Assembly (NCBI RefSeq): GCF_006345805.1
Contig: NC_043000.1
Coordinates: 22,196,001 to 22,260,000 of the forward strand
Direction: 5' to 3'
DNA length: 64,000 nucleotides
Source: Octopus sinensis
Lineage: Eukaryota
Part shown: positions 14,601 through 46,090 of the stretch, in pieces
Numbering within the stretch: position 1 is the first letter of the stretch
Layout of the letters: every line of letters starts with the position of its first letter
Made by a program: the position numbers and the translations under genes
Notes under the pieces: model-generated
What the model saw: the letters and a program-made list of their open reading frames with translations, nothing else
The model's database searches: none
Told to the model about the DNA's origin: nothing

Positions 14601-17600
14601 TGAATATTTACACAGCAAATAGCAAAAATTCTCAAGATGTTTAAAGATGATTAAATTGTTGAGATTACACCCACTTTGCAACATTCATGTAGGTCTCATT
14701 TACTAGTGTTGATTTTCTAACTCACATTTTAGGTTTTAAACAAATTAATAATCTTTTAAATTATTGGTACATGTTCTAATAAAGCAGTTACTCTTCCAAC
14801 TAGTTTCTCCAACTTTTCTCCAAGTTATGGACATTAAATTTACTCAGTCACTCTCTTCACAAGCTTTCCATAAATGCATGTGCTGCAATTAATTTTGTTT
14901 GTGAAAAAGCTTTGAATTTTTGTTTTTTGCAAGCCGACGTTCAAGATATTCCAGGCAACGCTCTCGTGGGCCGTAAGTAGTTCTATGCTGATGCAAATGG
15001 TTGTGTTAATGCTGCCAATCACACTCCATACCCACTTCCAGCCATATCTTACAGGAATTATTTACCTGTTATACTAATATTCTATGAGACTAATTCAAAT
15101 AATTATTTTGTAATATGTCTTCTTGAATGGTCTTAACAAGGTGTTATTTAGTTTCTTGTGTATTTCTACAAACTTAGAATTCTAATATTAGAACAGATTG
15201 AAATATATATTTTGTGTGAATTATAAAAATAAAAAACAAAAAATTGTATATCAATGAAGTAAGTTTTGGTGAATCAAGTAAGTTTTGGTGAATTGTAGCC
15301 TATTTTCTCTCTCTTCTCTTGACATATTTTATCAACATTTTACTGCATATTACAATGTTTGAGTGATATATGTTTAAGATTACTCCCTTTCTTAATACAT
15401 CCTTTTATGGGTGTATTGAAATGTCTATATCAATTACATTTAGCATGGGGGAATTAGACACAATACAGCATTTTTTGTTTTTTTGTACCTTAATTCTGAT
15501 TTCAATAATTAGTCAAAAAATTTGTGGATATTGCATGTTTTTTCTGTTCCTCGCCATAGTAACATTTTAATATTCTTTTCCAATTATTTAATATTTCAAA
15601 ATTAAGTACATTCCTTCCTTTTCCTCCTCCTCCTGATAAAACAAGCAGTTTTATGGGATTAATTATAATGATCATAAAATGTGATCCATTCTCTGATTTT
15701 GAGTTGATTAAAAGTGCATGAACGATGAAATTTTATGTGGAGTTTCAAGTATAAAGATATTGGTTAGTATGTCATCCAGAGTATTCTTTTACTGGTTTCA
15801 GTCTTTAAACTGCGACCATTCTAGGGCACTCTATTTGTTTTTGTCAGTTATATTAATGCCCTTACTTATTCTTGTACTTCTTTTATAGATGTCTTTATTT
15901 CAACATCTAAGTTCACCTATTGAGTTAAACTCACTAAAGGTGGATATAAATACCACAATGTACCTGCACTGATATACACATTTGTAATTTTTTTTGGTCT
16001 TACATAAAAGATGCATTAGATGTATGTAGAGGTTGGTATAATTGTATGTAAGTAAGGCAGATGATTTCCTCATACATAAAAGTTTTGTATGCTTCACTTT
16101 ATATCAACAATACTTATCAGCAAGTCTAAAATAATCTACAATTATCTTTGGCTCTGGCAAGCACTGTTGGCTTATCACTCAAGCAACCCACATGCAATTA
16201 CATACATCTTACAACTTCTGCAGTTTCCACCTACCAAATTTCACTCCTAGTGCATTGGTTAACCTGAAGCTAGAAGTAATTTCTGTTCACAGTGTTGAGC
16301 AGTGGGTCAAACCTGGAAACATGTGGCTATGAAGTGAAGCTCTTAACTGCACAACCATGCTTGATAGCTTTCTGTCATTTTTTTTTATCTAAATGCATGG
16401 CTTCTCTGCATTAATTAGTGGAAAATAAATTGAAAATTCAGTTAAATGTTCACATATATAAACTATAATTTAATTTCAGTAGATTAGGCTGGGCTAATTT
16501 TTTTTACCACCCAATGAAGAATGTTTATGGAAATTTAAAACTTTTTGTCTTCTAATGATTTTATTGTCCATAAAATTATTTGGTAATTTGTCAGTGTGTG
16601 AAAAAATAAATGTGTTGATTGTGAAGACTTGAACAAAGAATTAATTCCTTCATAGTTTGGATTTCAGTTCTAGAAATGTTAAAAGTAGACAGTTTAGTAC
16701 TATATATTCTTGAATGGGCTCTATCTGGGTATTTATTGAGTATACTAGTTTCCTTGTTATATAGGATGTTTATCTTGTTGTTTAACCCCAAATCAGCTTT
16801 GATTGAGCGGGCTTATGATCAAAAATCTACTCAATCAAGATTGAAGTATTCTAAACATTACTATCCCATTGTTTTCTACGCACAGTGTACCTAGGACCAT
16901 ACTGTTTAATGTGTTGTCTCAGGTGGTATGGTGGAATTTGAGAGTGATTTAGCTGCTAATTTCTAGCCTCTTGGATGACCACAGTCTCCATCATTTTCCT
17001 TCAACTAAACAACCTGATGTTGATGGACGTGTCCACAGGATGTTATTTTCTGTTCGTTTCCAAAGAAGAGATGAAATTATATCAATGTTCTCATACATTT
17101 TTAGTGTTTGCATGTTCTACAGTACCAGTTACGCTGATGTGATTAATCAGCTTGTAATTTCCTGAACATGTTATCCTCATGGTATTACTGGTATTCAGTT
17201 CAAGAGATGTTGTTGTGGTCTGGCATTTCGGTCATCATTTTGTAGATCTGGAACTATGTTGCCCAGTGTGTCCTTCTTTCTTAAGGCAATATTGTGTGAT
17301 TAAAGAGTTGGCTGCTATTTTTAGCACATTGAGAATGACCACACAGCAGGCCCTTTCATTGCTTCAACCATTGAAGTGTTGTTGGTGATTGTTATTAATA
17401 AGAGCTTCTCATTATGAGATTTTTCTGCTCATTTTTCCAAAAGAATTTACTTATGGGACATGTATTTTATGAGAGTGTTTTTTTTTTTTTATTTTTAATT
17501 TTTATTTATTTATTTTTTTTATTACCCTATCCCACCTCTATTGTTGGCAACTTTTATTCATAATTGTTTCACATTTCTTTTCAGAAATGGTCAAATAGCT

Positions 17601-20600
17601 GCTTTGAAAATTATAAAAAATGTTGAAAAATATCGAGAAGCTGCAAAGTTAGAGATCAATGTTCTTGAGAAGTTAAAAGAAAAGGATCCAGAAGGCAAAT
17701 AGTTAGTACTCTCTCTTTCCCTCTCTCTCTCTTACTCTCTCTGTCTTTCTTTGTGTGTGTGTGTATCCAAATATACTGCAAGGTAATGACTAAATTTTTG
17801 TTTCATTTAAATTGGTGTTTGAAGGGAAAACGATGTTCAAGAAAGATTAGTAGTGGGGGGTGCATGGGTATATATGTGGCTTTCTTCATCTCTCTGGCAA
17901 AGCAAGTCAGCAGGAGGAGAATAGCTTGAAGTAGGATTAAGAAGGTGGAAAATTCCAAGTAGCATAGTTTTGTTGTAATTGTAGTAAACTTAGGTAAACT
18001 GAAAGAGAAACAGCTGGAAGAATTAGTTGGTACATAAGGGGTGGGGTACATTTTTTCTTTTCTTTAATTCTAGTTTTATTATCTATTAATAATTTTGATA
18101 TTAAAAAAAAAAAAATGCAAAAGCAAAAAAAAGTCACAGTTCAACCCAGACCATTAATCTGATTCCATAGCTGAACAATATAGAGTAAATCAATACAAGT
18201 CTTGTATATAATGGATTGGCATCAACTCAATTTGCATGTGTGTGTGTGTATATATATACATATATATTTTATTATTATTATTATTATTATATTTTGTAAC
18301 TTTTTAAAGTTAGATTTTAACCAGAGATGAACCTTCAGCTTCTCTTTGTACATAGATGCACTTTGCATCATGATAAACCCCTGCTACTTATGTCAGAGCC
18401 TATTTTAAAAATCAAAGCTGTAAACAGAACACATACAGTATGTATGTACTCTCCTTTTAACAGTCCCATAACAGTGTAAGATTTATATTATTATTTGATT
18501 TATTTATGCTCATTTACATGTCTTAAGCATGCAGTTCATGTGTTGCATTCGTGCAGGAAGCATTGCAACTTGTTTGCGCATGCATACACAAATATGAAAG
18601 AGTTGAATCTAAAATGTAAAATTTTTCAAAAACTTTAAAATATTAACAGTCTAGGGAGTGAATAGGATTACTGCATAATGATTGTTTTTTTTTTCTTTTT
18701 CTCTTTTTTCTTTGTCCAGACACAGTTTGTAAGTTTAAAATTTATAATTTCTTTTTCCATTTCAGTTTGTGTGTACGGATGCTGGATTGGTTTGATTATC
18801 ATGGGCATATGTGTATAGCATTTGATATGCTTGGTCTTAGTGTATTTGATTTTTTGGTAAGTTACAGAAGAGTTCTTTTACCAAATTTAATTTGCTATTA
18901 AACTCATGTTTAATATTTCAATTTTTTTCTTTTAATTTTTAAATTTTAATTGGTTTATATGCATATGGTATTTCTAATGCTTACGTCTGGACATGTTACT
19001 TAATGCAATTTTTTAAAATTTTCTTCTGCAGAAAGACAACACTTATTATCCATATCCTCTCGATCAAGTTCGAAATATCTCCTATCAGTTGTGCTATGCA
19101 GTAAATTGTAAGTTTCAGTAAATTTCCATTTTTATCATCCATGAACCTTTTCATTTTTATGTAGTCAGGGGAACAAGGTGTATCTGTGACTTTTGTAATG
19201 CTCTACAAGACTGAAATAAATATGATTGCTGTTTAGCTTGAATAACTGTCAATTGATATCCATAAGGAAAACATTGGTGAACTGGCTGAATTGTCACCAT
19301 ATTGGACAAAATGATTAGCATTTCTTTTGGTTCTCTACATTCTGAGTTCAAATCTCACCAAGGCCAACTTTGTCTTTCATCCCCTTGGGGGCTAATAAAA
19401 TAAAATACCAGGCTAGTACTAGGTGGGTGGTGGGGGTCAATGTAATTGACTTCCTCTTTTCTCAAAAAATTGCTGGCCTTGAAGCCCTACTATGGACTGG
19501 CATCCCATTCAGGGAGAGTATTGTAATCTCAGTTACTTACGTGCCGTTGAAACCAGCTAACTGGACTTGTGAGTCCTGAGGCTCAGGGGGTGGGGTGGAG
19601 GCATAGATAGGAAGGGTTGCTGTTCTGGGAAGATAAGGTTAGTTGGATGAGAAATGGTGGGGGGTGGGATATGCAGCCAGCTGTCTCTATAGGGTACTAG
19701 CGGTTGTAGTAGTGGCAGAAAGGACAGATTGATAAGAAAGGTTTGATTAACATAGACTTATTCCTGGAATTTAACTTTGATGAATACATTTATTCTACAT
19801 CTTACCAATTGAATTAGTTTTCATTCTTAGATTATAATTTAACAATAAAATTTTCCCATATTGGTCTTTTCTTTCTTTCAGTAAACAAATGTTTAATTCA
19901 TTCAAACTAAAATGGTTAGAATTATTAGATGGTTGTTTGTTTTGATTATAAAGTTATAATCTGTGTGTGTTTATACAAAACAGTAAATAGCTTTTTCCCT
20001 CTTTTTTTTTTTTTTTTTTTTAGTCCTCCATGAGAACCAGCTCACGCATACAGACTTGAAACCAGAAAACATACTTTTCGTTAACTCCGATTTTGAAGTA
20101 TCATATAATGCTAAAAAGGTAATATTGTTTTTATCTGCATCTATTATAATAATAATAATAATAATAATAATAATTGTGTACAGTGCTCAGGTGCACTACA
20201 ACTCATCTAAAATGTATATATAATCAGGTGTAGTTTCGGCGGATTTCGGAAAGCATGAGGGCCTTAAAAGATGCAGTGTCATGGCAGTCAACAACTGACG
20301 CAGGCAGTTTATTCCATGCTTCAGCAACTCTGAGCGTGAAAAAATGTTTCTGAAAGTCATGGGAGCTGTATTGTTTTCTGACTTTGTAGGCATGTCCACG
20401 TGTGTTAGACACATGGAGATCAAAAAGGTGTTCAGTGTTGTTGTTGGTGAGGTGGTTGATAACTTTGTGGGTGTTTACCAAGTCCGTCGCCAAACGCCGG
20501 AGCTTCAGTGAATCCATGCCCAGGGAAACAAGGCGCTCAGAATATGGTAGGTGTCTGATGGAGGGTATGCGTTTGGTTGCACGTCTCTGGACAGATTCCA

Positions 20601-23600
20601 GGAGGTCAATGTTCTGTGCAAGATAGGGGCTCCAAACTGATGATGCGAATTCCAAGTGTGGTCGTACCATAGCTGTATACAGTTTTAAATAGATGGCTGG
20701 AGAGCGGCTAACAAAAGACCTGCTGAGTGATGCCAAGACACCCTCGGCCTTCCTGACAATCTTAGAGATATAATAATCAATCTGTACATAATTGAGAGCA
20801 TGTGCTTGATTGTAATTATTTTCTCATGAAATATGTTTTTCATCTTTGTTTCATATTTTACATTTTCTAGAGGCGAGATATGCGGAGAGTAAAAAATACA
20901 GATATAAGATTAATAGACTTTGGATCTGCAACATTTGATCATGAACACCACAGCACTATTGTATCAACGAGGCATTATAGAGCTCCTGAAGTTATTTTGG
21001 GTAAGTGTATTATAGTTTTCTTTTACTTGGGAATTGCTAGCCTTGTTTATATTTATTGCAGTTTTATAGATAGTTTCTCAGACAATACAAAAGGAATTAA
21101 TTTGTGGCAGCTGGAGAAGTATCGAAAATGATTAGCTTGATAAATGAACCCAACTCCAGACACAATTCAACTGCCAGTACATGACTGATTTATTATTGTT
21201 ACACTATCCATCCATTCAGAAACTTAGGACTTAAAGATTAAAGGGTGAAAATTTGGAAAACGGGTCTTGACATTTTGAAAATATAAAAATGTGATTTATC
21301 ACCACCACCCACTTATATGAAGTGTTTGTCTTTATTGCATGTTATTTTAATTGTACTTTCTGGAATGTTGTGGTTTTTCCAGTAGAAGTTCCGTATTACA
21401 GTTGAAGTGGTAAAATAACTTTAATTTGAATGGATTTAGATTCGAAACTTTTGGAATAAAACTTGGCTAGTTTGGTAAAAGCAATGCACATTCACTTTGG
21501 AATGTGGTTGGTTCCCTATTGAAAATGTTGTCCCGCTGGAGCCCGCATTCTGGATTCACCAGATACTGATGTAATGATTCTAATGATACTTGAGCATTTA
21601 AGTTATCATTTACCTAGTTTTGTGAGTATAAATGGGACAACATGCTGACGAGGTCAGTGCAACTGTAAGTCTTGTTTCTGAGATCAATACACTTAGCTCT
21701 CAACAGACAGATTTACCTGGTTTTAAGTATTGCAGCTATGGTGATTCATCGTCATCGTTGTTTAATGTCTGTGTTCCATGCTAGCATGGGTGGGGCAGTT
21801 TCACAAAAGCCGGCCAGGCAGAAGCCTACACCAGACTTCTATGACTGTTTTGACAGGAATTTTACAGCGGGATGTCCTTCCTAACACCATCCACTCAGCA
21901 GAGTGGACTTAGTGCTTTTTACATGGCACAAGCACAAGGTCAGTTTTGGGAAAGCTTTTACAGCTGGATGCCCTTCTGAACACCAACTACTTTACAGTGT
22001 GGACTGGGTGTTGTTTTAAGTAGCACCTGCACTGACAGGGTCACCAAGTATCTGCAAGACAAAAAAAAAAACCTACTTTCAAGAGGAGAGGGTCATTGGA
22101 GGAAGTGATCTTGTGATCTAGTGTCAGATGATGAAAGGTTATAGTGAGACAGAGACATAGAAACTGTAGAGGAAGTACAGAGAGATCTGTGTACCAACTT
22201 TGATTCTTCACCTGGGCTAAGTTGCAACAATAACTGGAAGTGAACATCAACTAAATATATGCTTGAGATTTTGAGAACAAATGTATCATGATGAGCTAGG
22301 ACTTAATAGCAGCTGTATAAACCATGCCAAAGCAGTCACTGGAGCAAATTCTGTCAAACTACGCAACCCATGCCAGCATGGAACATGATGATAATGAATC
22401 CATTAGTTTTAAATTCCATAAATCTTAGTTGAAACCTTTCAGTGAAATTTTCTTTGCTGACTGTATTTGCCTCATACAGCGATTGACCTTGATCTTAAAT
22501 AAGAAGTAAAGCTAAATTTATTCAGCCCTTACATTAAGAATTTATTTTGTCTTGCAATGATTTGTATTTATCCAGCAATACTTTTTTTGTATTTATATGT
22601 ATGCCAGCATGGAAGGCAGACGTTAAACAATGATGATGATGGATCATTTTTCTGTGTCTCTGCAATAATTTTCTGCATAACTGATATTTTTCTCTTTGTA
22701 ATTTTAGAATTAGGTTGGTCTCAACCCTGTGATGTGTGGAGTATAGGTTGTATCATGTTTGAGCTATACACAGGATACACATTATTTCAGGTAAATTGCT
22801 TTAATTACTTAATTAAATGTTTATTAAATTATATAATAGTATGATGTTTATTAATTAAACTTTTTGGCTATCAAAGGTACACTTACTTGCTATTTGCTTT
22901 TTTACAAGTATTCTTTTCAGCCTCTATATGAATTTTATCCTTAATTTGATTTTACTGTCATTCTTCCAAACTATTATGACTATCTGTTACTGTTGTTCTA
23001 TAGTCAATAGAATAGGCAACATTATTGATTTAGTTTAGTATATTTTCTTGATATTATACATAGACATGCTGACGTGCATTTTTGTTTTTTAATTCTACTT
23101 CTTAGCAAAATGTTATTTTGTTTAATATTATTCTTGTAAATCTTTGTATTTTATCTTAAATATATTTAGTGTGAACACACAATCAACATTGTATTGGTTG
23201 CTTTGACATTTACTTTTTTGTTTTGGGTTAGACACATGACAATAAGGAGCATTTGGCAATGATGGAACGGATACTGGGCAGTATACCATATCGGATGGCA
23301 AAAAGATCTCGGTAAGCTTATTGACTCAGAGTTGATATTGGACATTAGAAAGGATGGCTATAGAACAAAAATTAAACAAAAATCTAACTTAAATAGGTGA
23401 AATAATATTTTAATTGATAAACTATGATTACTTTATAAATATATTTTTCCTAATTTTAAATTTGACAGTAATGTTGAGTGGGGTGGGGTGTTGCATAATG
23501 AATCATTAACATTTATTACAACATATATTACTTTAATTGTTAAGCAATTATATTTGCAAAAGTGTATCATAACATTTCATATTGGTATTTCTTTTTATTA

Positions 23601-23782
23601 TTATTTTTCTCCCTAATTTAATTAGTCCAAATTTCATAAAGAAATCTTCCTATAATTGATATTTATGTTTGATGTGCAGCAGAAATACATAGGTATATAT
23701 TTCTAAATGTAGTTCAGTGAACTCTTGGAATCATTCCAACTTTAGAATATTAATATTGTAAATTAAAAGTCTGTATGTATGT

Positions 23783-23831
<49 letters not shown>

Positions 23832-26182
23832 TACATTAGTACATAACTGCCAGGAGATAAAAGCATGCTAGATTTTTTTAGGGTATTAATTTCTTATATA
23901 ATTCAATAGTTAGTTACAATTAATAGTGTAGGGGTAGAATATAGCAATGTAATTACCTGCTTATTAAAAGAATGCAGAAATGTTGAAATGTACTCAAGAT
24001 GTCAATAAAAGTTGTATTAACAATATGATAAAATGATTTCATAAATTAGTTTATACGGTAGTGTCATGGCTCAAATATGAGTGAAGATAAAATGTAATTA
24101 CTTGCATATCAAACAAATTGTCTGTTTTTATAACAGTCCTGTGTTACCCCTTCTTTTAAACTTTAAATTGCATTTTATGAACTGTAGCATTGTTGGTTAC
24201 AGTTTTCCAGTGGGATAATCATTGGTTCACTGTCTATTAACAATGGTGAGAGTGACAAGAGGTTGTCAGTGGAACTTTGGCTGAACAAATAAATACAAAT
24301 TATTTTTGTGTAAAAGCACCAGTTTGTTTGTTTCTCCAAAGTGCAATTAACAAAAAAAAAAAAGACAATTTACATGGGATGTATTTTGTATTCCTGTTGT
24401 AATATTTAGTAAATTTTAAGTGATTGTGTGGCATCTTATGTGATTTACATTTAGTAGATATTACATGAGTCAAAGACATTGTTGATTTTGAAACACAAGT
24501 TTAAGAAAATCCATAAATGATGATTTATTTTCAAATTATAATAACCCTGAAGTAAACTTTAATTATAATAAAATTCACTTGTCATTTTGTTCCTATTGTT
24601 TTAAGAACAAATTACTTCTGGCATGGTCGCCTTGATTGGGACTCGACTACTTCTGCTGGGAGATATGTAAGGGAGAACTGTAAACCACTTTATGTAAGTA
24701 CATGCTCAGCCTTCTCTGTAACTACTACCATAAGTGCACTATAGTGCATGACTTACTATTTTCCAACTGTAAGAAACCACTGAAGTGTATGACGTTTGGG
24801 CAATGTGCCAGCAGGTAACAACTAATTTGTTCACAACACTTTTGGTGTGTTGTCTTTTAGGTAGTAGATACATTTCTAAACTTAAGCTCTTTCTAATGTA
24901 AAATCTCTCTGTTGAAAACAAAGCTTCGTTTTTTGGGGGATAAACAAAATTGCCAAGTTTCATTTATTTATTGTGTAAACTTAATAAAAAAAATGTCCTA
25001 AAATATATAAGCTATTTTCTCAAGGTGATTTTTTTCAAAATTTTCTAAAGTTATATCTGAAGAAGTAAAATCTTATCTTGTAAGCCTTCTTTGGGAGGTG
25101 ACATTGATATTTCTAGAATAGTTATATTTTGGTGTAACTCTATTTTAATCCATTCCCGATTAGATAGTTTCCTATTTACTCTTTCAATAATCTTAATTCA
25201 CAATTTTTAATTTAAGCTCAACATCTAAAATCTTTTCATTGGGGACTAATGTTGTTTACTTGCTTGTTCAAATTTCCTTTCAATTGTTTCTTCAGTTAGC
25301 CATTTAAATTTGGTAGTAGTTGCCAGTGGGGCAATGCATGTGTTTTGTGGATCCTTGAATCTGCCTGCAAGTTCTGTTTGTATTTTTATTCTTCTGACCA
25401 AACTTCTAATTTGTTATTTATTAATCTCCCAGCATATTTAGTACAAACTCTTGGTAATAACCCAAGTTCCCACCCCATAAATTTTTGTCTCTTTAGTTGA
25501 TTAGTTTACCACTTTTCTTTTTGCTGCCAGCATTCATAATTTGTTTCAATACTAATATAACTTACCTTTTATTAGTTGTTTCCATTGAACTGAATGTAGT
25601 TTGACTTGGGTAGCATGCTGCATGGCTATTCTCATTAGCTCATACGGCTTTGTTTGTTTGTTTGTTTTTCTAATCCCTAACCCCACACTCCCCATATTTA
25701 TCTCCAAAGAAAAAGCAAGTATTTCTACCATGGGAAACTGGACTGGGATGAAAAAAACTCATCTGGGCGGTATATTCGGGAAAATTGCAAACCACTTAAG
25801 GTGAGTAACAAGTTATTTAGCTGATTCCTTTTCAAAATGTGTTTAACCAATGGGAGGAGGAGGAGGGGAATTAAAGTTAATATTTCATAATTTTTGTAAG
25901 CATTGTGGATTTGTAATTTACAAATCTCCTTTTACATTGGATTGTTCCAGATAGTGGATTGGCAGAAATAGAGGAGTTTAAGACAAATGCCTTGTGGTAT
26001 TTTGTTATGACTCTTTACAAACCCTGCCGAGTTGAATTTGGCTTTTTATTGTTCTGGGACTGATAAAATAGTATCAGTCAAGTAACATGGATCATTTATA
26101 AACCTCACTAGGATTTGTGCTTATGTTAGGAATGAAGGCAACAACTTAATATGTAAACAGAATACATACACTCACACGTGTA

Positions 26183-29400: not shown

Positions 29401-30038
29401 TCCATTCTTTCTGGTGACCATTAACATCATTGTGTCACTGCCCTCTTTATCATAGCCTTTACTGATTCAGTTGGAAAATTTAAGAGAACATGATTTTATT
29501 TAATTGAATCTGAAAATTCTGAAGTTTAATTTTCTGTAGGGAGTATGCAACCAAATCAGTTCATATTAGCATGTTTTTGATAAGTAATTCCTTTCATTCT
29601 CTCTTTATATATATATTGTATGGTTCACTTGAATAACGTCTTTCTATTACTGATCCAAGAGTTAAGATGTCTAAGGGTTTCTCTAGGAAATATGCTTATT
29701 TCAAAAATTGTTGGCATTCTTTCTGCAAGGGGTAAATTCCCTTCTCTGCTTTCATGCTAAACTTCTCAATTTACCCCCCCCCCCCCGGTCTCTCCACAGG
29801 CATTGTTCTCTTTTATTTTTATCTCACTGTCGAACCTTGTTGTCCCCATGCTTGTTACGTCACAAATATGGATGTAATATGTTTTAGCAATATCAAAATC
29901 TTTATACCAGAAGAATTTATCCAGCTCCTTAGGATTAGATCATGTTTGAACCCCCCCCCATACATTTTCATATCATTTTCAGTTAGAGAAACATTCTTTT
30001 ACCAGTATCATATTCGATTGTGTCTATATTACATTTAA

Positions 30039-30069
<31 letters not shown>

Positions 30070-30087
30070 ATATATACATATATACAT

Positions 30088-30118
<31 letters not shown>

Positions 30119-30456
30119 CACACATATATACATATATATATATATACATATATATATACATACATATACATACATATACATATATATACATACATATATA
30201 TATATATACATATATATACATATATATATATATATACATATAATACATATATATACATATATATACATATATACACATATATATATACATATACATATAT
30301 ATATATATATATATACATATATACATATATATATATATACATACATATACATATATACATACATATACATATATATACATACATATATACATATATATAT
30401 ATAACATATATAATATATATATATAATATATATATATACATATATAATATATATAT

Positions 30457-30554
<98 letters not shown>

Positions 30555-30618
30555 TATATATAATATATATATATATATATACATATATTATATATATATA
30601 TATATACATATACATATA

Positions 30619-30651
<33 letters not shown>

Positions 30652-30736
30652 CATATTATATATATATATATTATACATATATATATATATATATAATATA
30701 TACATATATATTATATATATATATATATACATATAT

Positions 30737-30786
<50 letters not shown>

Positions 30787-30813
30787 TATTATATACATAT
30801 TATATACATATAC

Positions 30814-30846
<33 letters not shown>

Positions 30847-31231
30847 CATCTATATATATACATATATAATATACATATATATATATACATATATATATAT
30901 ACATATATATATATACATATATATATATACATATATATATATACATATATATATATACAATATATATATACATATATATATATACATATATATATACATA
31001 TATTATATAATATATATATACATATATATATATATACATATATATACATATATATATTATATAATATATAATATATACATATATATATATATACATATAT
31101 ATATATACATATATATAATATACATATATATATATATACATTATATATATACATATATATATATATACATATAATATATATACATATATATATATTATAC
31201 ATATATATATATATACATAATATATATATAT

Positions 31232-31262
<31 letters not shown>

Positions 31263-31263
31263 C

Positions 31264-31296
<33 letters not shown>

Positions 31297-31319
31297 CATA
31301 TATTACATATATACATGTG

Positions 31320-31353
<34 letters not shown>

Positions 31354-31432
31354 TATATTATACATATACACACACATATATATATATATACATATACACA
31401 CCATATATATATATATATATATATACACATAT

Positions 31433-31470
<38 letters not shown>

Positions 31471-34354
31471 CACATATATATACACATATATATACACATA
31501 TATATATATATACACATATACACATATATATACATATGCACACATACATACGTCCTGTTCATGATTATTATTTTTTTCTTTAGTAAACCTTTCTTGTAGA
31601 AATTTCATTTGAGTCTTTCTTGGAAGAAAGTATCATTTGTGTTTCTGTCAAGGATTATATCAGAATAACATTTGAGATGCATTGTTAATAATAAAAAAAA
31701 AAAATGAACTTGTTCTGTAGATACACTTCTGTTTCATTATGGTAGTTAATGCAAGAAGCCTAGATGTAGAGCCATTATTACTAGTCAATTTATATATACT
31801 GACATACATACCATACAACCATTTAAACCCATTTTTGAAGTGAGCATGTGTGTCCTTTTTGTATGCTTATTAGCAGTGTCTATCTTTAATGTCCCCTTCA
31901 TTTTCATAAGAAAACATTGTAAATTATGTGGATATGTTGCTTGGAAAACAAAACCTTGGCTAGACTAATATTTCATTGCTATGTCCATCCTTTGAAGTTT
32001 TCATATTTGTACCATGTGATGAAGGTATATTAAAAAGACAAAAAAAAGAAAACTGATTTGTTGTGGTATTAGTTGAGATGAAATGATATTCCAAGTTACT
32101 AATATTCAGGTACTAATGTGATTGTGTGCATGAATAGTAAAATATTGATGACTGAAATAATACTATTTGCTTATTTACACCTTCCCTCCTTCCATATTAG
32201 TTTGGTACACCTTGAAAACAAATGTAACCAAGTGTATTTAGTAGCTAGCTCTAGGAATCAGTAATTCCAAAACCATGTGTGTAGATATTATTACATCTTG
32301 CAGCTTTTCTAAGTGGTTCTAAAAATATCATACCTGGATAACTGTTGCTACGGCCAAGGAAAGCAAACATGCCACCAAAAGTCATAGTTATGTTAGCTAT
32401 TTCTCTATTAGATAAAGAATAAATAAATTGGATGGGTGGAAATAATGTTCTTTTCATCAAGAATATAAAAAATTTACATGTCTATTAGAAATTTATTCGT
32501 ATTACAGTTAAAGGTAATATTTGAGGAAACTATTATTAAGAAGAGCAGATTTTCACAGAATATTTTTTATTGTGATATATTTTTTAGAGTTAGCTAGCTT
32601 CTGCTCAACTTTTATTTTTTCTTTGTAAAATTGGTATTTTTTTTTTTTACACTTTAGTTCTTGTGATTTTTGTAGAAAACCATTTCATATTTATATCTAT
32701 TTATAATAAAATAGAAATCTTTTAAGATGTGTAAATTTTAACATATCATCTCAGAGTGTTTAAAGAATACTGTCAAGCTATTTACACCAATTGCTATTTC
32801 AGGGAAATTTTATTAACAGCCTGCTTTCATCATTTTGGTAGTGTCACACTAATTTAAAATAGCTTGGATGTTTTTAATGATTGATGTAACTGACCTATTA
32901 CAGCTTTGCAGAATGGGCAACATCACCAAGTTTAGATACAATAACCTTTTACCAATCCCCTCTATGTGACGTGTGCCTCCCTCTTTCTTCCTTACAGCAC
33001 TATTTAAGAGACAAAGGGATCCAACATCTTCAGCTCTTTGATCTCATTGAAAAGATGCTTGAGTATGAGCCTCATTACAGGATAACTCTTGCAGAAACAC
33101 TTGCTCACCCTTTCTTCAAACCCTTATTAAAAGAGCAACCACATCTAGAGCACAAGCCATCCGTGCCGAAGGAACCAAGGATCGTGGACCGGCGCAAAAG
33201 TTACCAGGGCAGTGAGTTATCATCTGAAAACCATGGTGACCGTGACTGTGTGAAAACAAAGAGTGAGGGTCCAGGCAAATCTGATGTCAGCTACAGCTAC
33301 TTGCCAGGTGATCATCTCCAACATTAATAGTTGCATGGGACTTTAAACTTGAGCATGTTATTCTCCCATTTTCACCCAACCCACCACTTGTATTCACTTC
33401 ACTTCACTTCACATTCATGGTAATGACAGCAGCTATCTCTACCACCAGTATCACTATTACCTCTAATTATCTCTACTAACAGTGAAAAATAATCTGTTGG
33501 AGGGGCGGGGTGTAGGTTATCATTTCAAGTTGTTTGTGTTGCTACTATATTTATTGTCTTTTTTTTTTCTGTAACAATTCAGAATGCAGATAATAATAAT
33601 AATAATAATAATAATATTTACTTCAGTTTTACATTGGATATCTTAACTTTTAATCAAATTTATGTATCACTAAATGATTAGAGCTATTGGCCCTAAGAGA
33701 TTGCCTGGGGTTTGAGTTTGGAACTATTGGCAGAGTATTTGAGGGTACAGACTTCTTACTGCTTATAGCAGTAAGTTGTATCGCTCCGTGGTGTCTATAT
33801 ACAGCTCAGTGACATGGACTGGCCGGAGTTGAGCATCACTTTGTAAATAGATAACTGTCGACAAACTGTGACTCCTTTAACCCCCTCATATTGATCTGAT
33901 GGTCAGTTGCTTGACTTGTCATTAACAGAGGATCAGCCATTTTGACTCGAACCCAGAAAATCAGGTATCTCTTAATGACAATCAGGTGGATGAAGCAAAG
34001 AAAGTTCCATGCTTGGCAATGACCTGAATTTGAAGTTATGACTTACGAGCTTGCAATAGTGCATTACTTAATTCACTCAACCATTTTTTTCCTTCATCTT
34101 TGCATACATCCACACGCTTCGCTTTCACTCATTTCTACACCAAATTAGATACATATGTAGCTCACCTAATTATCACACACTTAAAGATACTCATTTAGAT
34201 TTCTCTTTCTTAATATTGAAGTATCTCTATTCGCACAGGTATTCAAATTAAAATGGTAAAATGGAGTCAAAACTATTAAACTATTCCATCCATTGTATTA
34301 CAGTCAGTTGTTGCAAACTGAATTAAAAGCATAATTCCAGTTTAATATTTACAT

Positions 34355-37101: not shown

Positions 37102-39713
37102 AAAAGTATCGATTATTCAAATATCCTATATTACCAGTTGCTAAATCTTGGTAGATCCTAATTCACTCTATCATTTTCGAGGCAGTGCTCCAACATGGCC
37201 TTACTCAGATGACTAAGACAAGTAAAATATAAGAAATAAATAATTTTTGCTGATGCTAGCCACAACTATTTTCCTCACATTCTGTTTATTCTTAATTGAT
37301 TAAACTCTGGTTTTTCAAGCATTCTAACTTTTTAAAAAATGAGGAAAGTTCATGAAAACAGAGGTTTTGTGTAAAGCATTTCTTATTCATTTTTGTTCAA
37401 AGAAGTGTTTTTTGTTCATTTTTATTCAAAACAACTTACTTTTTCTTTATCTTTTTACCCCATCATTTTGTTCTTAAACTCTTATTAAAACAGCACTAAA
37501 CATTGTTTTTGGAGTTGAAGGAGATTATAGCTGCTGGGTACTGTTCTTTTTAGCATTTAGATGCACAGTTTAATCAAGGGAAAAAAAACCCCAGTAAAAT
37601 TAAATTTAATTTTATGTGACTGATTGAGTAAACAAAACGTCATTATTTTCTATTTAAACAGTTTAATACAGCAAGTACATAGTTGGGATAACTGAATCCT
37701 CATACAAATTTGGATTCCTCATTAATAATACTTCAGTAAACGCATCATTGTAACGACTTAATTTACTCCATAGATTTGACTGAATTAAAAAAAAAACAAA
37801 AATTGATTCCAGCCTTTGCAAGTGTGTGTTTGTGTGTAAAAAAAATAAGTATTTGTTCTTCTGTTGGTTTGTACAGTTTAGATTAGTAGATCATGGTAAT
37901 CCACTCACTCTTCCTGGTCCATCCCTGATGAGTGACATGTTTCCAGTAGATCTGGATTTATGAATGTCTATCATTCTTTAAAGAGGGGAAAAGATTCAAG
38001 TTGTTAGAGAAGGTGATTATGTATGGTTATCTCCATCACCTTTGAGGTAATGAGTGTGGTAGGACAGTAGCTGTGTGGGTTAGAAAAGGTCCCTTTGGAA
38101 TGGGGACATGTGTGCTGAGTTGTATGAAAGTAAGGGACATTGTTAGGATGGCTGAATATAGGTTGAGAGATTTGTGTCAGTGAGTAATAGGATGTATGGA
38201 TCAGTCGACAGATGTTAGAAAAAAGGAAGAAGGATTGTCCTGTGAGTTAGAAAAGAGGAAGAAGGATTGTCCTGTGAGTTGAGGTTGGTCTTTTACTTAT
38301 AGGAAGGTTTAGAGGGTGCCAGTGACATAAGGTGATAATAACTGCTACTGAAAGCATGGCTTGGTCTAAATATTTGCAATGAATCAAAGTCTGCTCCAGG
38401 CCCCCATGAGTCAGGTAGTGGCATTCGATTAATTACCACCCAAAGAAAGAAGAGAGCGCTCTGTGGCATGCACAGGAACTACATTAGATTAATTTCATCT
38501 TAGTCATATGAACACCTGTATTAGTTACCGATAAAATATACCATTGCTTTACAATTATATATAGTAGAATAATGGTGAACATATACAATCTCATAAATAC
38601 TAAACTGTAAGAAAAAAGAAAATAAACAAAACAGTGGTCAGAGGATCACTGAAACTGCAGATATTCAGCTTCAAACTTTGGTGAACCATTTAGACAATTC
38701 ACTGGTTTTTTGTGCCTGCATCTGTCTCAGTTTTGCCTTTTGGGTGGATTTGGTAGATGGAAACTGAAAGAAGCCCATCACATACCTCTGTGTATGTGTC
38801 TGTGTTTGCCCCCTCTTCACCGCTTGTGTTTTTGTGTTTACATTCCTGTAACTTAGCAGTTCAGCATAAGAGACTGATAAAATAAGTACCAGGCTTTAAA
38901 AAAAGAATAAGCACTGGGGTTGATTCATTTGACTATAAACCCTTCAAGTTGGTGCTCCAGCATGGCCACAGTCTAATGACTGAAACAGTAAAAGATAAAA
39001 GATGTGTTTGTTTATTGTTTAGGAAGGAACCTTTTACATGGGTTTTATAGGAGTACAAGATTTAAGAGTTCAAATAATTTTCTTTCATTTTTTTCTTTTT
39101 TATTTCTCTGTCTTTTTCTTTGTTTCTTCCATAATGTTTATCAAATCAAATCCAGAACTGATGATTTAATTTTTTTTTTTCTCTTCTTCACTATTAATGG
39201 TTCTGACCTCAATGGCTTGACTTCTCTGAAGATATATTTCATGTTAATTTCTTTTCTCTTTTCTTTCTTAATGATGGAAAAAAAAAACTCTTATTCAGTA
39301 AAACGTATTCTTTAAAATATCAAGCATGATAAATAAATGCAAGTTCCCTTTATATTTTGGTATCCTACAATTTGCATATAAATTTAATCTGTTTGGACAA
39401 CAGTTTTTCTTTTCTTGTAGTCTCTATTTCATCCTTCAAAATATTGAAAATCAATAATAATATTTTCAGAAAATTGCTTGTATGGTCATATGTTTATTTA
39501 CTTACATTGATGTCTATTTTTCGTTTTTTAATACAGCGGTACATAATGGAGCCCAACAATGAGGACCACGTGCTTCTGTTTGATTTGATTTGGAAGATGC
39601 TACGATATGATCCCCTGGCGCGAATAACACTAAAAGAAGCTTTGAAGGATCCATTTTTTAAAAAGTCCTGCTATTTGGGTGGACGTGCTAGGTCACATAG
39701 TTTAAGTAGATAA
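5588..39713 (+). CDS. CLK2: LAMMER dual-specificity kinase, CLK2-like / Doa ortholog (5'-partial, multi-exon gene span)
   Basis: Exons join in frame through GT-AG sites to give [69 protein letters not shown]. The LAMMER motif is diagnostic. The exact paralog name is by similarity from memory. Confidence 0.95.
7946..8012 (+). CDS. CLK2: CLK exon, Gly-rich loop ([23 protein letters not shown])
   Basis: ttcag| acceptor, AG|GTAGGT donor, 67 nt, phase 1 to 2. Confidence 0.95.
14934..14972 (+). CDS. CLK2: Putative 39-nt cassette exon encoding [14 protein letters not shown]
   Basis: U-rich tract ending tttttgcaag|, donor CC|GTAAGT. Length 3n, phase 2/2 compatible, no stop, CpG-rich in a CpG-poor intron. 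Confidence 0.6.
17585..17701 (+). CDS. CLK2: CLK exon, catalytic Lys and helix C ([39 protein letters not shown])
   Basis: ttttcag| acceptor, TA|GTTAGT donor, 117 nt, phase 2/2. Confidence 0.95.
18766..18856 (+). CDS. CLK2: CLK exon ([30 protein letters not shown])
   Basis: ttcag| acceptor, TTG|GTAAGT donor, 91 nt. Confidence 0.95.
19032..19107 (+). CDS. CLK2: CLK exon ([25 protein letters not shown])
   Basis: ctgcag| acceptor, T|GTAAGT donor, 76 nt. Confidence 0.95.
20024..20118 (+). CDS. CLK2: CLK exon, catalytic loop ([32 protein letters not shown])
   Basis: poly-T tag| acceptor, AAG|GTAATA donor, 95 nt. Confidence 0.95.
20154..20768 (-). mobile_element. 5'-truncated CR1-clade LINE (3' end of ORF2, 3'UTR and (ATT)n tail)
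   Basis: Minus-strand ORF 20224-20736 contains [48 protein letters not shown], typical of the CR1 ORF2 C-terminus. (AAT)n at 20148-20174. Candidate TSD TATAATAAT at 20145-20153 and 20769-20777. Confidence 0.85.
20871..21000 (+). CDS. CLK2: CLK exon, DFG and activation segment ([43 protein letters not shown])
   Basis: ttctag| acceptor, G|GTAAGT donor, 130 nt. Confidence 0.97.
22708..22790 (+). CDS. CLK2: CLK exon ([28 protein letters not shown])
   Basis: ttttag| acceptor, CAG|GTAAAT donor, 83 nt. Confidence 0.97.
23232..23311 (+). CDS. CLK2: CLK exon with LAMMER motif ([27 protein letters not shown])
   Basis: ttag| acceptor, CG|GTAAGC donor, 80 nt, ends in phase 2. Confidence 0.97.
24606..24693 (+). 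CDS. CLK2: Mutually exclusive exon A ([29 protein letters not shown])
   Basis: ttttaag| acceptor, TAT|GTAAGT donor, 88 nt, phase 2 to 0; homologous to exon B. Confidence 0.9.
25710..25800 (+). CDS. CLK2: Mutually exclusive exon B ([30 protein letters not shown])
   Basis: CCCTAAC branch-point consensus at 25676-25682, ccaaag| acceptor, AAG|GTGAGT donor, 91 nt, phase 2 to 0. Confidence 0.9.
26221..26388 (-). repeat. Short interspersed repeat, same family as 56485-56640, hammerhead segment deleted
   Basis: Reverse complement shares ttcctttctg...cgtaaaagactttctcac and ttgttcatacac with the 56.5-kb copy; flanked by (TA)n. Confidence 0.55.
30038..31550. repeat. About 1.5-kb compound (TA)n/(TACA)n microsatellite array
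   Basis: Directly visible; source of the spurious Ile/Tyr ORFs. Confidence 0.98.
32998..33327 (+). CDS. CLK2: Alternative last exon 1 ([40 protein letters not shown] plus a long tail, stop)
   Basis: Pyrimidine tract and ttacag| acceptor, phase 0, kinase subdomain XI, TAA at 33325-33327. Confidence 0.9.
   Translation, partial: HYLRDKGIQHLQLFDLIEKMLEYEPHYRITLAETLAHPFFKPLLKEQPHLEHKPSVPKEPRIVDRRKSYQGSELSSENHGDRDCVKTKSEGPGKSDVSYSYLPGDHLQH
38030..38480 (-). mobile_element. Decayed Penelope-like (Neptune-type) linker fragment
   Basis: Minus-strand remnants [10 protein letters not shown] and KGTF resemble the YHPxNL and GTFPC linker motifs; many lesions. Confidence 0.4.
39537..39713 (+). CDS. CLK2: Alternative last exon 2 ([58 protein letters not shown])
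   Basis: tttttaatacag| acceptor, phase 0; ends in RSHSLSR like Drosophila Doa. Confidence 0.9.
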   Translation, partial: RYIMEPNNEDHVLLFDLIWKMLRYDPLARITLKEALKDPFFKKSCYLGGRARSHSLSR

Positions 39714-44730: not shown

Positions 44731-45779
44731 GCTAATATCGAGCTGAATGAGTTAGTAAGCTTGATAAGTGTTAAGAGATTTAACTGCATGAAACCATTGG
44801 TTGCTTTGTTAACCTACAAATAAAGTGTGTGTATATATATATATATATATAGTAAAATATGGAAAATTTCTAACATTCTTTGAAAATCTGTATACTGATC
44901 TAAAATCTAATTAATTTCTGTCTGCAATTGTCATGTTTTATTCAATATTTTCAACATTTCAATTTCATTAAAAAAAAATGCGGTATGAAAAGTAGTTATG
45001 AATTATGACCAGTTTTTTTAATGCTGTTAAATTAAAAAGTTATGTATTATTTTAATTTACCCAAGTGTTGTATATTAAAATCGATTTTACTAATTTCTCC
45101 TGCGAGAATATTCTTAGGCACTGGCATGGCTGTGTGGTCAAGTTCACTTCGGTTTTAGATTTAGTCCTACCTGCGCGGGACCTCGGGCAATTGTCCATCC
45201 TTGGGCATTCCGAAGCCATGTGAGTGAATTTGGTGGATGGAAATTGAAAACAGCTCATCGTGTGTGTGGACAGTGTGTTGGTATAGCTTTCCAAAACTCC
45301 GTAGCTTAACGTTTCAGAAAAATCCATACAATAAATACCAGACTTAAGAATAAGTCGTTTTGAATAACTGAAGCAAGTAAAACATGATTAAGGACACCCG
45401 AATAAATCCTGTAGCAATGACGAAAGTAATTCTCTAAGGGTTTTTTCCCCCTTCATTCTTAACTGGAAATTTGTCTGCTATAACTGCTTTCCTGTCGAAC
45501 ATTGTGAAGGCATGTAGCTTAGTGGTTTTGGTACTCGGCTCACGATCTTAAAACTGTGAGTTCGATTTCCGGCAGCATATGTCCTTGAGCAATACACTTT
45601 ATTTCACATTGCTCCAGTGCGCTCAGCTGGTGAAAATGAGTTGCACTTGTTATTCGTAGGGCCATCCTCGTCACGCTGTATCTCCTTGAACAAACTACAT
45701 TTCGAGTGCGGGTGTTTGTGGATTTGGTAGACGGAAACTGAAAGACGCCCTTCGTATATATATATATCGAAATCGAATT

Positions 45780-46090
45780 GAACCAGCCAGGATCCCTGGT
45801 CTGGTGGTACGTAAAAAGCACTATCCGACTCGTGGCCGATGCCAGCGCCGCCTCGACTGGCTTCCGTGTCGGTGGCACGTAAAATACACCAATCCGACCG
45901 TGGCCGTTGCCAGCCTCGCTTGGCACCTGTGCAGGTGGCACGTAAAAAGCACCCACTACACTCAGTGGTTGGCGTTAGGAAGGGCATCCAGCTGTAGATA
46001 AGACTGGAGCCTAGTGCAGGCTTCCTAGATCCCCGGTCGAACTGTCCAACCCATGCTAGCATGGAGAACGGACGTTAAACGATGATAATG
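45780..46090 (-). mobile_element. High-copy interspersed repeat with internal tandem subunits (other copies 21745-21990, 42945-43155, 43300-43480, 48020-48200)
   Basis: Shared catcatcgtttaacgtcc...catgctagcatggg...cagctggatgcccttcctaacgccaacc core; gtggcacgtaaaa subrepeats. Confidence 0.75.

What the first reader, a model, noticed from the sequence alone, without database searches (positions are those of the whole stretch)
24606..25800. Tandemly duplicated mutually exclusive exons rewrite the CLK MAPK-like insertion
Seen: two homologous exons (88 and 91 nt), both phase 2 to 0. Including both, or neither, shifts the frame. A = [29 protein letters not shown]; B = [30 protein letters not shown]. 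Known: this segment follows the LAMMER helix and forms the CMGC/MAPK-like insertion; vertebrate CLKs and Doa encode it once. Both copies keep the YF-HG-LDWD and GRY-R-NCKPL residues, so both look selected. Inference: isoforms with different surface charge and docking properties.
Basis: partly seen in the sequence, partly recalled or inferred. Interest (0 to 1): 0.75.

Follow-up and report, generated by a model that had tools for sequence, protein, structure and literature searches.

The report
Ancient alternative exon pair in CLK kinase
The octopus gene for CLK2, a kinase that controls RNA splicing, has two alternative copies of one small exon; only one is used per transcript, and the pair is conserved across molluscs, ribbon worms, lamp shells and flatworms, so these animals have long made two versions of the kinase.

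Summary
The window is the Octopus vulgaris CLK2 gene on the + strand. Exon A (24606-24693, 88 nt) and exon B (25710-25800, 91 nt) are homologous, with 19 of 29 residues identical. Both have AG/GT splice sites and the same phase, and there is no third copy. Using both or neither gives a stop codon within 3-14 codons.

Public gene models and short spliced contigs carry either A or B. The same A-then-B pair, 88 nt and 91 or 94 nt, lies after the LAMMER exon in eight further genomic loci. These come from Octopus bimaculoides, Argonauta, two other molluscs, a nemertean, a brachiopod, a flatworm and one unidentified animal. A copies are 70% identical between species, against 50% for A versus B within a species. 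This points to one ancient duplication with both copies under selection.

The exon covers human CLK1 residues 408-437: the beta pair, Trp419 and helix alphaH of the MAPK-like insertion. Helix alphaH barely differs between A and B. The differences are a lost basic N-terminal end, Tyr to Trp, one loop, and the last residue. Net charge is about +1 for A and +3/+4 for B.

New here: GCAUG, the Rbfox binding motif, is the most enriched 5-mer in the A-B intron across lineages. This suggests Rbfox switches B to A. What the two isoforms do differently is untested. I found no paper describing the pair.

The parts
23232..23311 (+). Constitutive LAMMER exon ([26 protein letters not shown]+CG). It ends in phase 2 and is the common upstream partner of exons A and B.
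24606..24693 (+). Exon A, 88 nt, encoding [29 protein letters not shown]. This is the derived but slowly evolving copy, with net charge +1.
   Evidence: present in isoforms P0122, P0254 and P0257
24694..24825 (+). Intron block just downstream of exon A, conserved between Octopus and Argonauta. It contains UGCAUG at 24745-24750, 53 nt after the exon.
25270..25709 (+). Intron block upstream of exon B, conserved between Octopus and Argonauta. It has GCAUG at 25336, 25613 and 25620, a likely branch site (ttctaat) and a long pyrimidine tract.
25710..25800 (+). Exon B, 91 nt, encoding [30 protein letters not shown]. This copy has the length, basic N-terminal end and charge (+4) of the single exon of vertebrates and arthropods.
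32998..33307 (+). Exon H, a 310-nt cassette exon ([25 protein letters not shown]...). It is a duplicated copy of the terminal coding exon and a downstream partner of A or B.
33308..33380 (+). Intron start after exon H, conserved in Argonauta, with GCAUG at 33333 and 33353.
39537..39713 (+). Exon R, the canonical terminal coding exon ([17 protein letters not shown]...RARSHSLSR*). When exon H is included it is read in the +1 frame and ends as AVHNGAQQ*.

Best explanation
**Shown.** An ancient tandem duplication of one CLK exon produced two copies, A and B. They are spliced in a mutually exclusive way, so one gene makes two CLK kinases. The two differ only in the beta pair, the Trp loop and the flanks of helix alphaH in the MAPK-like insertion of the C-lobe.

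- Both copies have intact splice sites and compatible phase.
- Transcripts that use both or neither hit a stop codon almost at once.
- Gene models and spliced contigs carry one or the other.
- The pair is kept in the same order in four phyla of Lophotrochozoa.
- A is orthologous across phyla and more conserved than B.

**Inferred.**

1. Transcripts with both or neither exon are removed by nonsense-mediated decay. The reading frame therefore enforces exclusivity. Steric blocking is not the cause, since the A-B intron is 1016 nt and the likely branch site lies next to B.
2. The choice is set by an Rbfox-family protein bound to the conserved (U)GCAUG sites in the A-B intron. Sites just downstream of A would promote A, and sites just upstream of B would repress B. 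A would then be the form of Rbfox-expressing tissues such as neurons and muscle, and B the default.
3. The switch removes about three positive charges, shortens the entry to the beta pair by one residue and changes Tyr to Trp. These changes fall on the surface that covers the LAMMER helix and the groove SRPK1 uses for docking. They would alter partner or substrate binding, or the stability of this lobe, not catalysis.

The confidence given (0.8) is for the part marked as shown. For the Rbfox step alone I would say about 0.5, and for the docking or stability effect about 0.35.
For: **Anatomy and frame.**

**Gene identity.** The best match is O. vulgaris CLK2 at 100% identity. Pfam finds a protein kinase domain. 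The best solved structures are human CLK2, at E 5e-181, aligned without gaps across exon B.

**One exon or the other in products.** This holds for O. vulgaris, O. sinensis, O. bimaculoides, Argonauta, Ruditapes (four isoforms giving all combinations) and Lineus X1/X2. It also holds for spliced contigs P0001, P0261 and P0123.

**Conservation of the pair.** Besides the window, eight loci have A of 88 nt followed by B of 91 or 94 nt, all with AG/GT sites. Further A-type proteins come from Ostrea, Gigantopelta, Plakobranchus and Mactra.

**Selection.**
- Octopus and Elysia A share 28 of 29 residues while the proportion of synonymous differences is 0.91.
- A-A identity between species is 0.70, against 0.50 for A-B within a species.
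- Between O. vulgaris and Argonauta, synonymous divergence of A and B is 0.05-0.06, against 0.29 in the constitutive kinase exons (Fisher P = 0.0025). This is typical of regulated alternative exons.

**Regulation.**
- GCATG ranks 1 of 1024 5-mers in the A-B intron over five independent lineages.
- There are 23 copies against 3.9-5.8 expected, and 0 of 2000 shuffles reach that count.
- The motif lies within 150 nt after A in 4 of 5 lineages and within 150 nt before B in 4 of 5.
- The enrichment recurred in two loci examined afterwards (P = 0.003 and 0.04).
- All four octopus sites are invariant in Argonauta, within an otherwise unalignable intron.
- Rbfox proteins bind GCAUG specifically and are conserved from worms to humans.
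- In C. elegans they select between mutually exclusive exons through UGCAUG in the intron upstream of the repressed exon.
- An RBFOX homologue is present in the O. vulgaris transcriptome.

**Structural placement.**. Both isoforms are predicted with the same helix, beta pair and helix in this segment.
Against: - I could not count RNA-seq junction reads. RefSeq-style isoform sets can be combinatorial, so the relative use and tissue pattern of A and B are unknown.
- No cephalopod transcript contig with B was recovered apart from gene models.
- In the octopus alone the GCATG excess is modest. The intron has 4 per kb, against about 1.1 per kb on this strand window-wide.
- Ruditapes has no site near exon A, and the Lineus and Ruditapes introns are not individually significant.
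- Binding and dependence on Rbfox are untested.
- The structure models have low confidence, with mean pLDDT of 58-63 and 56-72 in the segment. They show only that the predicted secondary structure is similar.
- Helix alphaH, the element that covers the SRPK-type groove, is nearly the same in A and B. A docking change is therefore not obvious.
- In coleoid cephalopods, constraint on synonymous sites could also reflect RNA-editing structures.
Confidence: 0.8

Rival explanations
1. One copy, most likely A, is a dead or accidental pseudo-exon that gene predictors picked up. Only B makes protein.
For: B looks like the single exon of other animals in length and charge. Many annotated isoforms use B.
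Against: A is the better conserved copy. It shares 28 of 29 residues between octopus and a gastropod at near-saturated synonymous divergence, and A-A identity across phyla is 70%. A is intact with AG/GT sites in all nine loci that have the pair. It is joined to both neighbouring exons in short spliced contigs from another cephalopod.
Confidence: 0.02
2. The pair is a real mutually exclusive switch, but something other than Rbfox controls it. Candidates are other RNA-binding proteins, competing RNA pairings between intron elements, or CLK acting on its own transcript. Under this view the GCAUG excess is incidental.
For: About 130 nt after A and about 440 nt before B are conserved between Octopus and Argonauta, far more than the GCAUG sites alone. 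Ruditapes lacks a site near A. [quoted passage not shown]
Against: GCATG is the single most enriched 5-mer of 1024, its position recurs across phyla, and the enrichment recurred in two loci examined afterwards. The only notable long-range inverted repeat is 24646-24664 with 25424-25442, and Argonauta breaks its 10-bp core with two mismatches.
Confidence: 0.25
3. The main role of the pair is dosage control. Use of both or neither exon yields unproductive, decay-targeted transcripts that tune CLK levels, and the protein difference is secondary.
For: Both-in and both-out transcripts reach a stop codon within 3-14 codons. Splicing regulators often use this kind of control (Jangi et al. abstract).
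Against: Dosage control would not require strong purifying selection on two different peptides over several hundred million years. It would also not explain a conserved charge difference, nor type-specific residues such as the deleted residue at position 1, the loss of the basic residue at position 3 and the near-diagnostic Trp at position 6.
Confidence: 0.08

Closest known systems
Human tandem-duplicated, mutually exclusive exons in kinases: FYN exon 7A/7B, MAPK8 (JNK1) and MAPK14 (p38 alpha)
   Same: A duplicated internal exon of a protein kinase is swapped to give isoforms that differ in one homologous segment. FynB and FynT differ in binding behaviour. MAPK8 and MAPK14 are CMGC kinases, like CLK, and are listed as tandem-exon substitution events.
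   Different: The gene, segment and lineage differ. No CLK event appears in the text of either paper on human tandem-exon events. This pair is in lophotrochozoans and affects the CLK-specific part of the MAPK-like insertion. That the JNK and p38 exons also lie in the C-lobe is my recollection and was not tested.
[quoted passage not shown]
   Same: These are mutually exclusive exon pairs whose choice depends on UGCAUG in an adjacent intron. A site upstream of an exon represses that exon. The CLK pair has the same layout, with GCAUG just before B and just after A.
   Different: The worm cases are proven by genetics and binding assays. Here only motif enrichment and conservation are shown.
Known CLK isoforms: CLK1 exon 4 skipping in mammals, and alternative N-termini of Drosophila Doa and C. 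elegans CLK
   Same: These are alternative splicing of a CLK gene with functional consequences. Isoforms that differ in the N-terminus localise differently.
   Different: Those events truncate the kinase or change the disordered N-terminus. This event exchanges a folded segment inside the catalytic domain. CLK1 exon 4 skipping is cited from established knowledge.
CLK1/CLK3 MAPK-like insertion and helix alphaH (Bullock et al. 2009)
   Same: Exons A and B encode the equivalent of CLK1 residues 408-437. This covers the two-strand sheet at 409-418, the invariant Trp419 that packs on the LAMMER helix, and helix alphaH at 424-432 that covers the SRPK1-type docking groove.
   Different: Human CLKs have one fixed version. 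A 2025 survey of CLK evolution calls this insertion a hotspot of divergence and reports one CLK gene in molluscs and brachiopods, but does not mention alternative exons.

Membership tests
CLK / LAMMER dual-specificity kinases | [11 protein letters not shown] signature in helix alphaG | tested here: met
   [11 protein letters not shown] is encoded at 23247-23279 within exon 23232-23311.
CLK / LAMMER dual-specificity kinases | Protein kinase domain with an HTD catalytic loop, and closest solved relatives being CLKs | tested here: met
   HTDLKPEN at 20047 and DFGSA at 20916. Pfam Pkinase at E 2.4e-49. The top PDB sequence matches are CLK2, then CLK3, CLK4 and CLK1.
CLK / LAMMER dual-specificity kinases | Arg/Ser-rich N-terminal region | tested here: met
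   Annotated full-length isoforms (P0122) have an RS/H-rich N-terminus. Its exons lie upstream of the window.
Tandem-duplicated mutually exclusive exons | Adjacent exons that are homologous, of similar length and the same phase, each with working splice sites | tested here: met
   88 and 91 nt, 19 of 29 residues identical, AG/GT at both, phase 2 to 0.
Tandem-duplicated mutually exclusive exons | Mature transcripts contain exactly one of the two | tested here: inconclusive
   All annotated isoforms and spliced contigs examined carry A or B, never both or neither. Both-in or both-out is out of frame. Raw read-level junction counts could not be examined.
Tandem-duplicated mutually exclusive exons | Both copies maintained by selection in other species | tested here: met
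   Intact in eight further loci from four phyla plus one unidentified animal. Non-synonymous divergence is far below synonymous divergence.
Rbfox-regulated alternative exons | Conserved (U)GCAUG in the introns next to the regulated exon | tested here: met
   Rank 1 of 1024 5-mers, 23 observed against about 4-6 expected, recurring positions, seen again in two further loci, and invariant in Argonauta.
Rbfox-regulated alternative exons | Exon choice changes with Rbfox level or binding, and use is tissue-specific | not testable with these tools
   No expression or binding data were available. An RBFOX homologue is reported in the O. vulgaris transcriptome.

The most novel reading that the evidence does not exclude
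Across Lophotrochozoa, an Rbfox-type splicing factor sets which of two versions of the splicing kinase CLK a cell makes. It may act in step with the neighbouring H exon, which also has conserved GCAUG sites just downstream. Neurons and muscle would then run a CLK with a different C-lobe surface, and so a different set of partners or SR-protein targets. That would be a two-tier splicing control circuit, older than the split of molluscs, nemerteans, brachiopods and flatworms, and so far undescribed.
Probability: 0.3. Interest if true: 0.7.

Novelty: new member of a known kind. Interest (0 to 1): 0.55.

Why it matters
CLK kinases phosphorylate SR proteins and so set splicing patterns genome-wide. 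What their MAPK-like insertion and helix alphaH do, beyond burying the LAMMER helix, is not understood.

This exon pair is a natural isoform pair that differs only in that element. It has been kept for several hundred million years in a whole branch of animals, and the derived copy is more constrained than the ancestral-like one. That gives a direct experimental handle on the function of this surface.

The conserved GCAUG sites also make a specific claim testable: that a tissue-specific splicing factor reprograms a general splicing kinase.

For annotation, the result shows that the A/B isoforms in mollusc, nemertean and other gene sets are real. It also shows that A is missed in some gene sets. 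Lingula is annotated with B only, although an intact A exon lies upstream.

Tried and rejected
- **Third copy of the exon.** None in the window. The next best hit is 19.6 bits, against 71 bits for A and B.
- **Competing RNA pairings as the exclusion mechanism.** Most inverted repeats in 23312-26100 are TA microsatellite. The one notable pair, exon A 24646-24664 with intron 25424-25442, loses two of its ten core pairs in Argonauta. Rejected as unsupported.
- **Steric exclusion.** The A-B intron is 1016 nt. A branch-site-like ttctaat and a stretch of about 70 nt free of AG lie just before B. Rejected.
- **Profile search with a 54-residue A-type alignment.** It returned only very short proteins, so it did not map the taxonomic range.
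- **Failed locus look-ups.** Look-ups for P0125, P0140 and P0184 failed because only the longest product of a gene is indexed. As a result, no ecdysozoan or deuterostome locus with introns could be inspected.
- **Structure models.** Both isoform models came out at low confidence. They were used only for secondary structure and not searched against fold libraries.
- **Literature.** Searches for a prior description found none.

Full report
**What is in the window.** The + strand carries the kinase part of a CLK (LAMMER) kinase gene. A motif scan finds GEGTFG at 7966, HTDLKPEN at 20047, DFGSA at 20916 and EHLAMMER at 23253. I traced the exons by eye and by tblastn:

- constitutive exons ending at or spanning 5686, 7947-8013, 17585-17692, 18766-18857, 19032-19108, 20023-20118, 20871-20996 and 22708-22790
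- the LAMMER exon, 23232-23311
- exon A, 24606-24693
- exon B, 25710-25800
- exon H, 32998-33307
- the terminal coding exon R, 39537-39713

A protein search with the spliced kinase domain gives a 100% match to CLK2 isoform X4 of Octopus vulgaris. Pfam finds a protein kinase domain. The closest solved structures are human CLK2, then CLK3, CLK4 and CLK1.

Exon A is 88 nt and exon B is 91 nt. Each has a pyrimidine-rich acceptor ending in AG and a GTAAGT or GTGAGT donor. Each starts with the third base of the codon begun by the CG at the end of the LAMMER exon, and each ends in phase 0. They share 19 of 29 aligned residues, and B has one extra residue at its start. No third copy exists in the window. 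With both exons the reading frame stops 14 codons into B. With neither it stops after 2-3 codons.

**One or the other is used.**
- Public gene models for O. vulgaris, O. sinensis and O. bimaculoides contain A or B, never both.
- O. sinensis X1 (609 aa) and X2 (608 aa) differ in this region only by B versus A.
- Short contigs of 1.5-2.6 kb from a related cephalopod encode an uninterrupted protein that runs through at least five exon junctions and carries A (P0001, P0261, P0123). The same exons span more than 15 kb in the genome, so these contigs come from spliced RNA.
- I could not inspect read-level junction counts.

**The pair is ancient.** I fetched the CLK locus of other species and scanned each with the exon peptides. 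After the LAMMER exon, an A-type exon of exactly 88 nt comes first. A B-type exon of 91 nt follows (94 nt in Ruditapes and Trichobilharzia). All have AG and GT. This arrangement is present in:

- O. bimaculoides and Argonauta hians (cephalopods)
- Elysia chlorotica (gastropod)
- Ruditapes philippinarum (bivalve)
- Lineus longissimus (nemertean)
- Lingula anatina (brachiopod)
- Trichobilharzia regenti (flatworm)
- one unidentified animal contig

Lingula is annotated with B only, but has an intact A exon. A-type proteins also exist for Mactra, Ostrea, Gigantopelta and Plakobranchus. Ruditapes and Lineus each have annotated isoforms with A and with B. The rotifer Adineta has only B, with 60-nt introns. 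Some insect-like genomic fragments have the LAMMER and B-type segments in one exon. Every vertebrate and arthropod protein retrieved is B-like. No ecdysozoan or deuterostome locus with introns could be fetched, so absence there is indicated but not proven.

**Both copies are under selection, and A more so.**
- A copies from different species are on average 70% identical. B copies are 53% identical. A versus B within a species is 50%. The A copies are therefore orthologues from one duplication that predates the split of these phyla.
- Octopus and Elysia A share 28 of 29 residues, while the proportion of synonymous differences is 0.91.
- B keeps the length, the basic K-x-K start and the net charge (+3 or +4) of the single exon of outgroups. 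A has net charge 0 to +1 in every lineage.
- Columns that separate the two types are the deleted first residue, the loss of the basic third residue, and the residue after the WD motif. The Trp in YF-W-HG is nearly diagnostic of A.

**Where it sits in the protein.** According to the CLK1/CLK3 crystal paper, the MAPK-like insertion is CLK1 residues 400-432. It contains a two-strand sheet at 409-418. The invariant Trp419 packs on the LAMMER helix. Helix alphaH at 424-432 covers the groove that SRPK1 uses for docking. The gap-free alignment with human CLK2 and the matching residue counts place exons A and B at CLK1 408-437.

Helix alphaH is almost unchanged between the two copies (SAGRYVREN against SSGRYIREN). 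The differences lie in the entry to the sheet, one strand residue, the loop after the Trp, and the last residue. AlphaFold models of both isoforms predict the same short helix, beta pair and long helix here, but at low confidence.

Between Octopus and Argonauta the introns are mostly unalignable. Two blocks are exceptions: about 130 nt after A and about 440 nt before B are conserved.

Synonymous divergence also differs. It is 0.05-0.06 in A and B, against 0.29 in the pooled constitutive kinase exons (Fisher P = 0.0025). This is typical of regulated alternative exons.

The conserved blocks hold four GCATG sites, at 24746, 25336, 25613 and 25620. All four are invariant in Argonauta. I then tested the motif without bias, using five independent lineages:

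- GCATG is the most enriched of all 1024 5-mers in the A-B intron.
- There are 23 copies against 3.9-5.8 expected, and none of 2000 dinucleotide shuffles reach that count.
- The motif lies within 150 nt after A in four lineages and within 150 nt before B in four.
- Two loci fetched afterwards showed the same excess (P = 0.003 and 0.04).

GCAUG is the specific binding element of Rbfox proteins, which are conserved from worms to humans. In C. elegans they choose between mutually exclusive exons through UGCAUG upstream of the repressed exon. An RBFOX homologue is reported in the O. vulgaris transcriptome.

The layout predicts that Rbfox promotes A and represses B. This is inference. In the octopus alone the excess is modest against the window-wide density, and Ruditapes lacks a site near A.

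**Mechanism of exclusivity.** The A-B intron is 1016 nt, and a branch-site-like sequence lies next to B, so steric exclusion is unlikely. The only notable long-range inverted repeat is not conserved. The reading frame, probably combined with nonsense-mediated decay, is the simplest enforcer.

**Comparison and novelty.** This is a tandem-duplicated, mutually exclusive exon pair, a known kind of event. It resembles FYN 7A/7B, MAPK8 and MAPK14 in humans and the Rbfox-controlled pairs of C. elegans. CLK does not appear in the text of the two papers on human tandem-exon events. A 2025 phylogenetic and structural survey of CLKs reports one CLK gene in molluscs and brachiopods. It calls the MAPK-like insertion a divergence hotspot but mentions no alternative exons. 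Full-text searches found no description of the pair. The isoforms are present, unremarked, in public gene sets. I rate it a new member of a known kind.

**Verdict.** What this analysis adds:
- The pair is found across Lophotrochozoa.
- A is the derived yet more constrained copy.
- The charge difference is conserved, and helix alphaH is not what changes.
- A conserved GCAUG signature points to Rbfox control.
- The pair sits next to a second duplicated exon, H, which gives four C-lobe variants.

The functional difference between the isoforms remains untested.

Noticed in passing
window 32998-33307 and 39537-39713: There is a second tandem duplication directly downstream of A and B. Cassette exon H (310 nt, HYLRDKG...[13 protein letters not shown]...) is homologous to the terminal exon R (RYIMEPN...[13 protein letters not shown]...RSHSLSR*). 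When H is included, R is read in the +1 frame and ends as AVHNGAQQ*. All four A/B x H/R combinations are annotated across Octopus species and in Ruditapes, and H and R exons are also present in Elysia. In Ostrea, Gigantopelta and Plakobranchus, proteins with A plus H are 950-1290 residues long.
   Followed up: partly
window 33333-33357: Two GCATG sites lie 26 and 46 nt after the donor of exon H, in a stretch conserved in Argonauta. The same factor proposed for exon A may therefore also promote H.
   Followed up: partly
window 14934-14972: A 39-nt Arg/Ser-rich microexon ([14 protein letters not shown]) is inserted between KDVA and NGQIAALK in the kinase N-lobe of O. sinensis isoforms X1 and X2. 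It is conserved in O. bimaculoides and Argonauta, and a GCATG lies 58 nt upstream at 14876.
   Followed up: partly
L005:77109-77199 (Argonauta hians exon B): Argonauta exon B has three replacements at positions conserved elsewhere (LDWD to LKWD, K to N, KPL to KPF) but only one synonymous change. Non-synonymous divergence is 0.055, against 0.003 in constitutive exons (P = 0.001). This could be relaxed constraint or adaptation of B in this lineage. Only an A isoform of Argonauta was seen.
   Followed up: partly
L001:13473-13560 (Lingula anatina): An intact A-type exon (LDYFWHGRLEWDHNSPGGRYVRQTCRALY, with AG/GT) lies upstream of the annotated B exon. The public Lingula protein retrieved here carries only B, so A looks like a missed alternative exon.
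   Followed up: yes
window 30000-31600: About 1.6 kb of (TA)/(TATG)-type microsatellite with G+C near 0.14 lies in the intron between exons B and H. A smaller TA repeat sits at 23750-23845 in the intron before exon A.
   Followed up: no
window 20224-20736 (- strand) and 21300-22400 / 45500-46100: A 170-residue open reading frame lies on the opposite strand inside a CLK intron and has no Pfam match. Similar short peptide-coding stretches (MLAWVGQF...) occur at about 21.8 kb (+) and 46 kb (-). These are probably interspersed repeat copies.
   Followed up: partly
P0285, P0286, P0354, P0391, P0427, P0438 (unnamed metagenome or read-archive fragments): A separate CLK lineage of unknown taxon has a B-length segment with Trp ([30 protein letters not shown]). 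In P0285 and P0286 it is fused to a variant LAMMER motif (HLAMMEAILG) in one exon. Trp at this position is therefore not exclusive to A-type exons.
   Followed up: no
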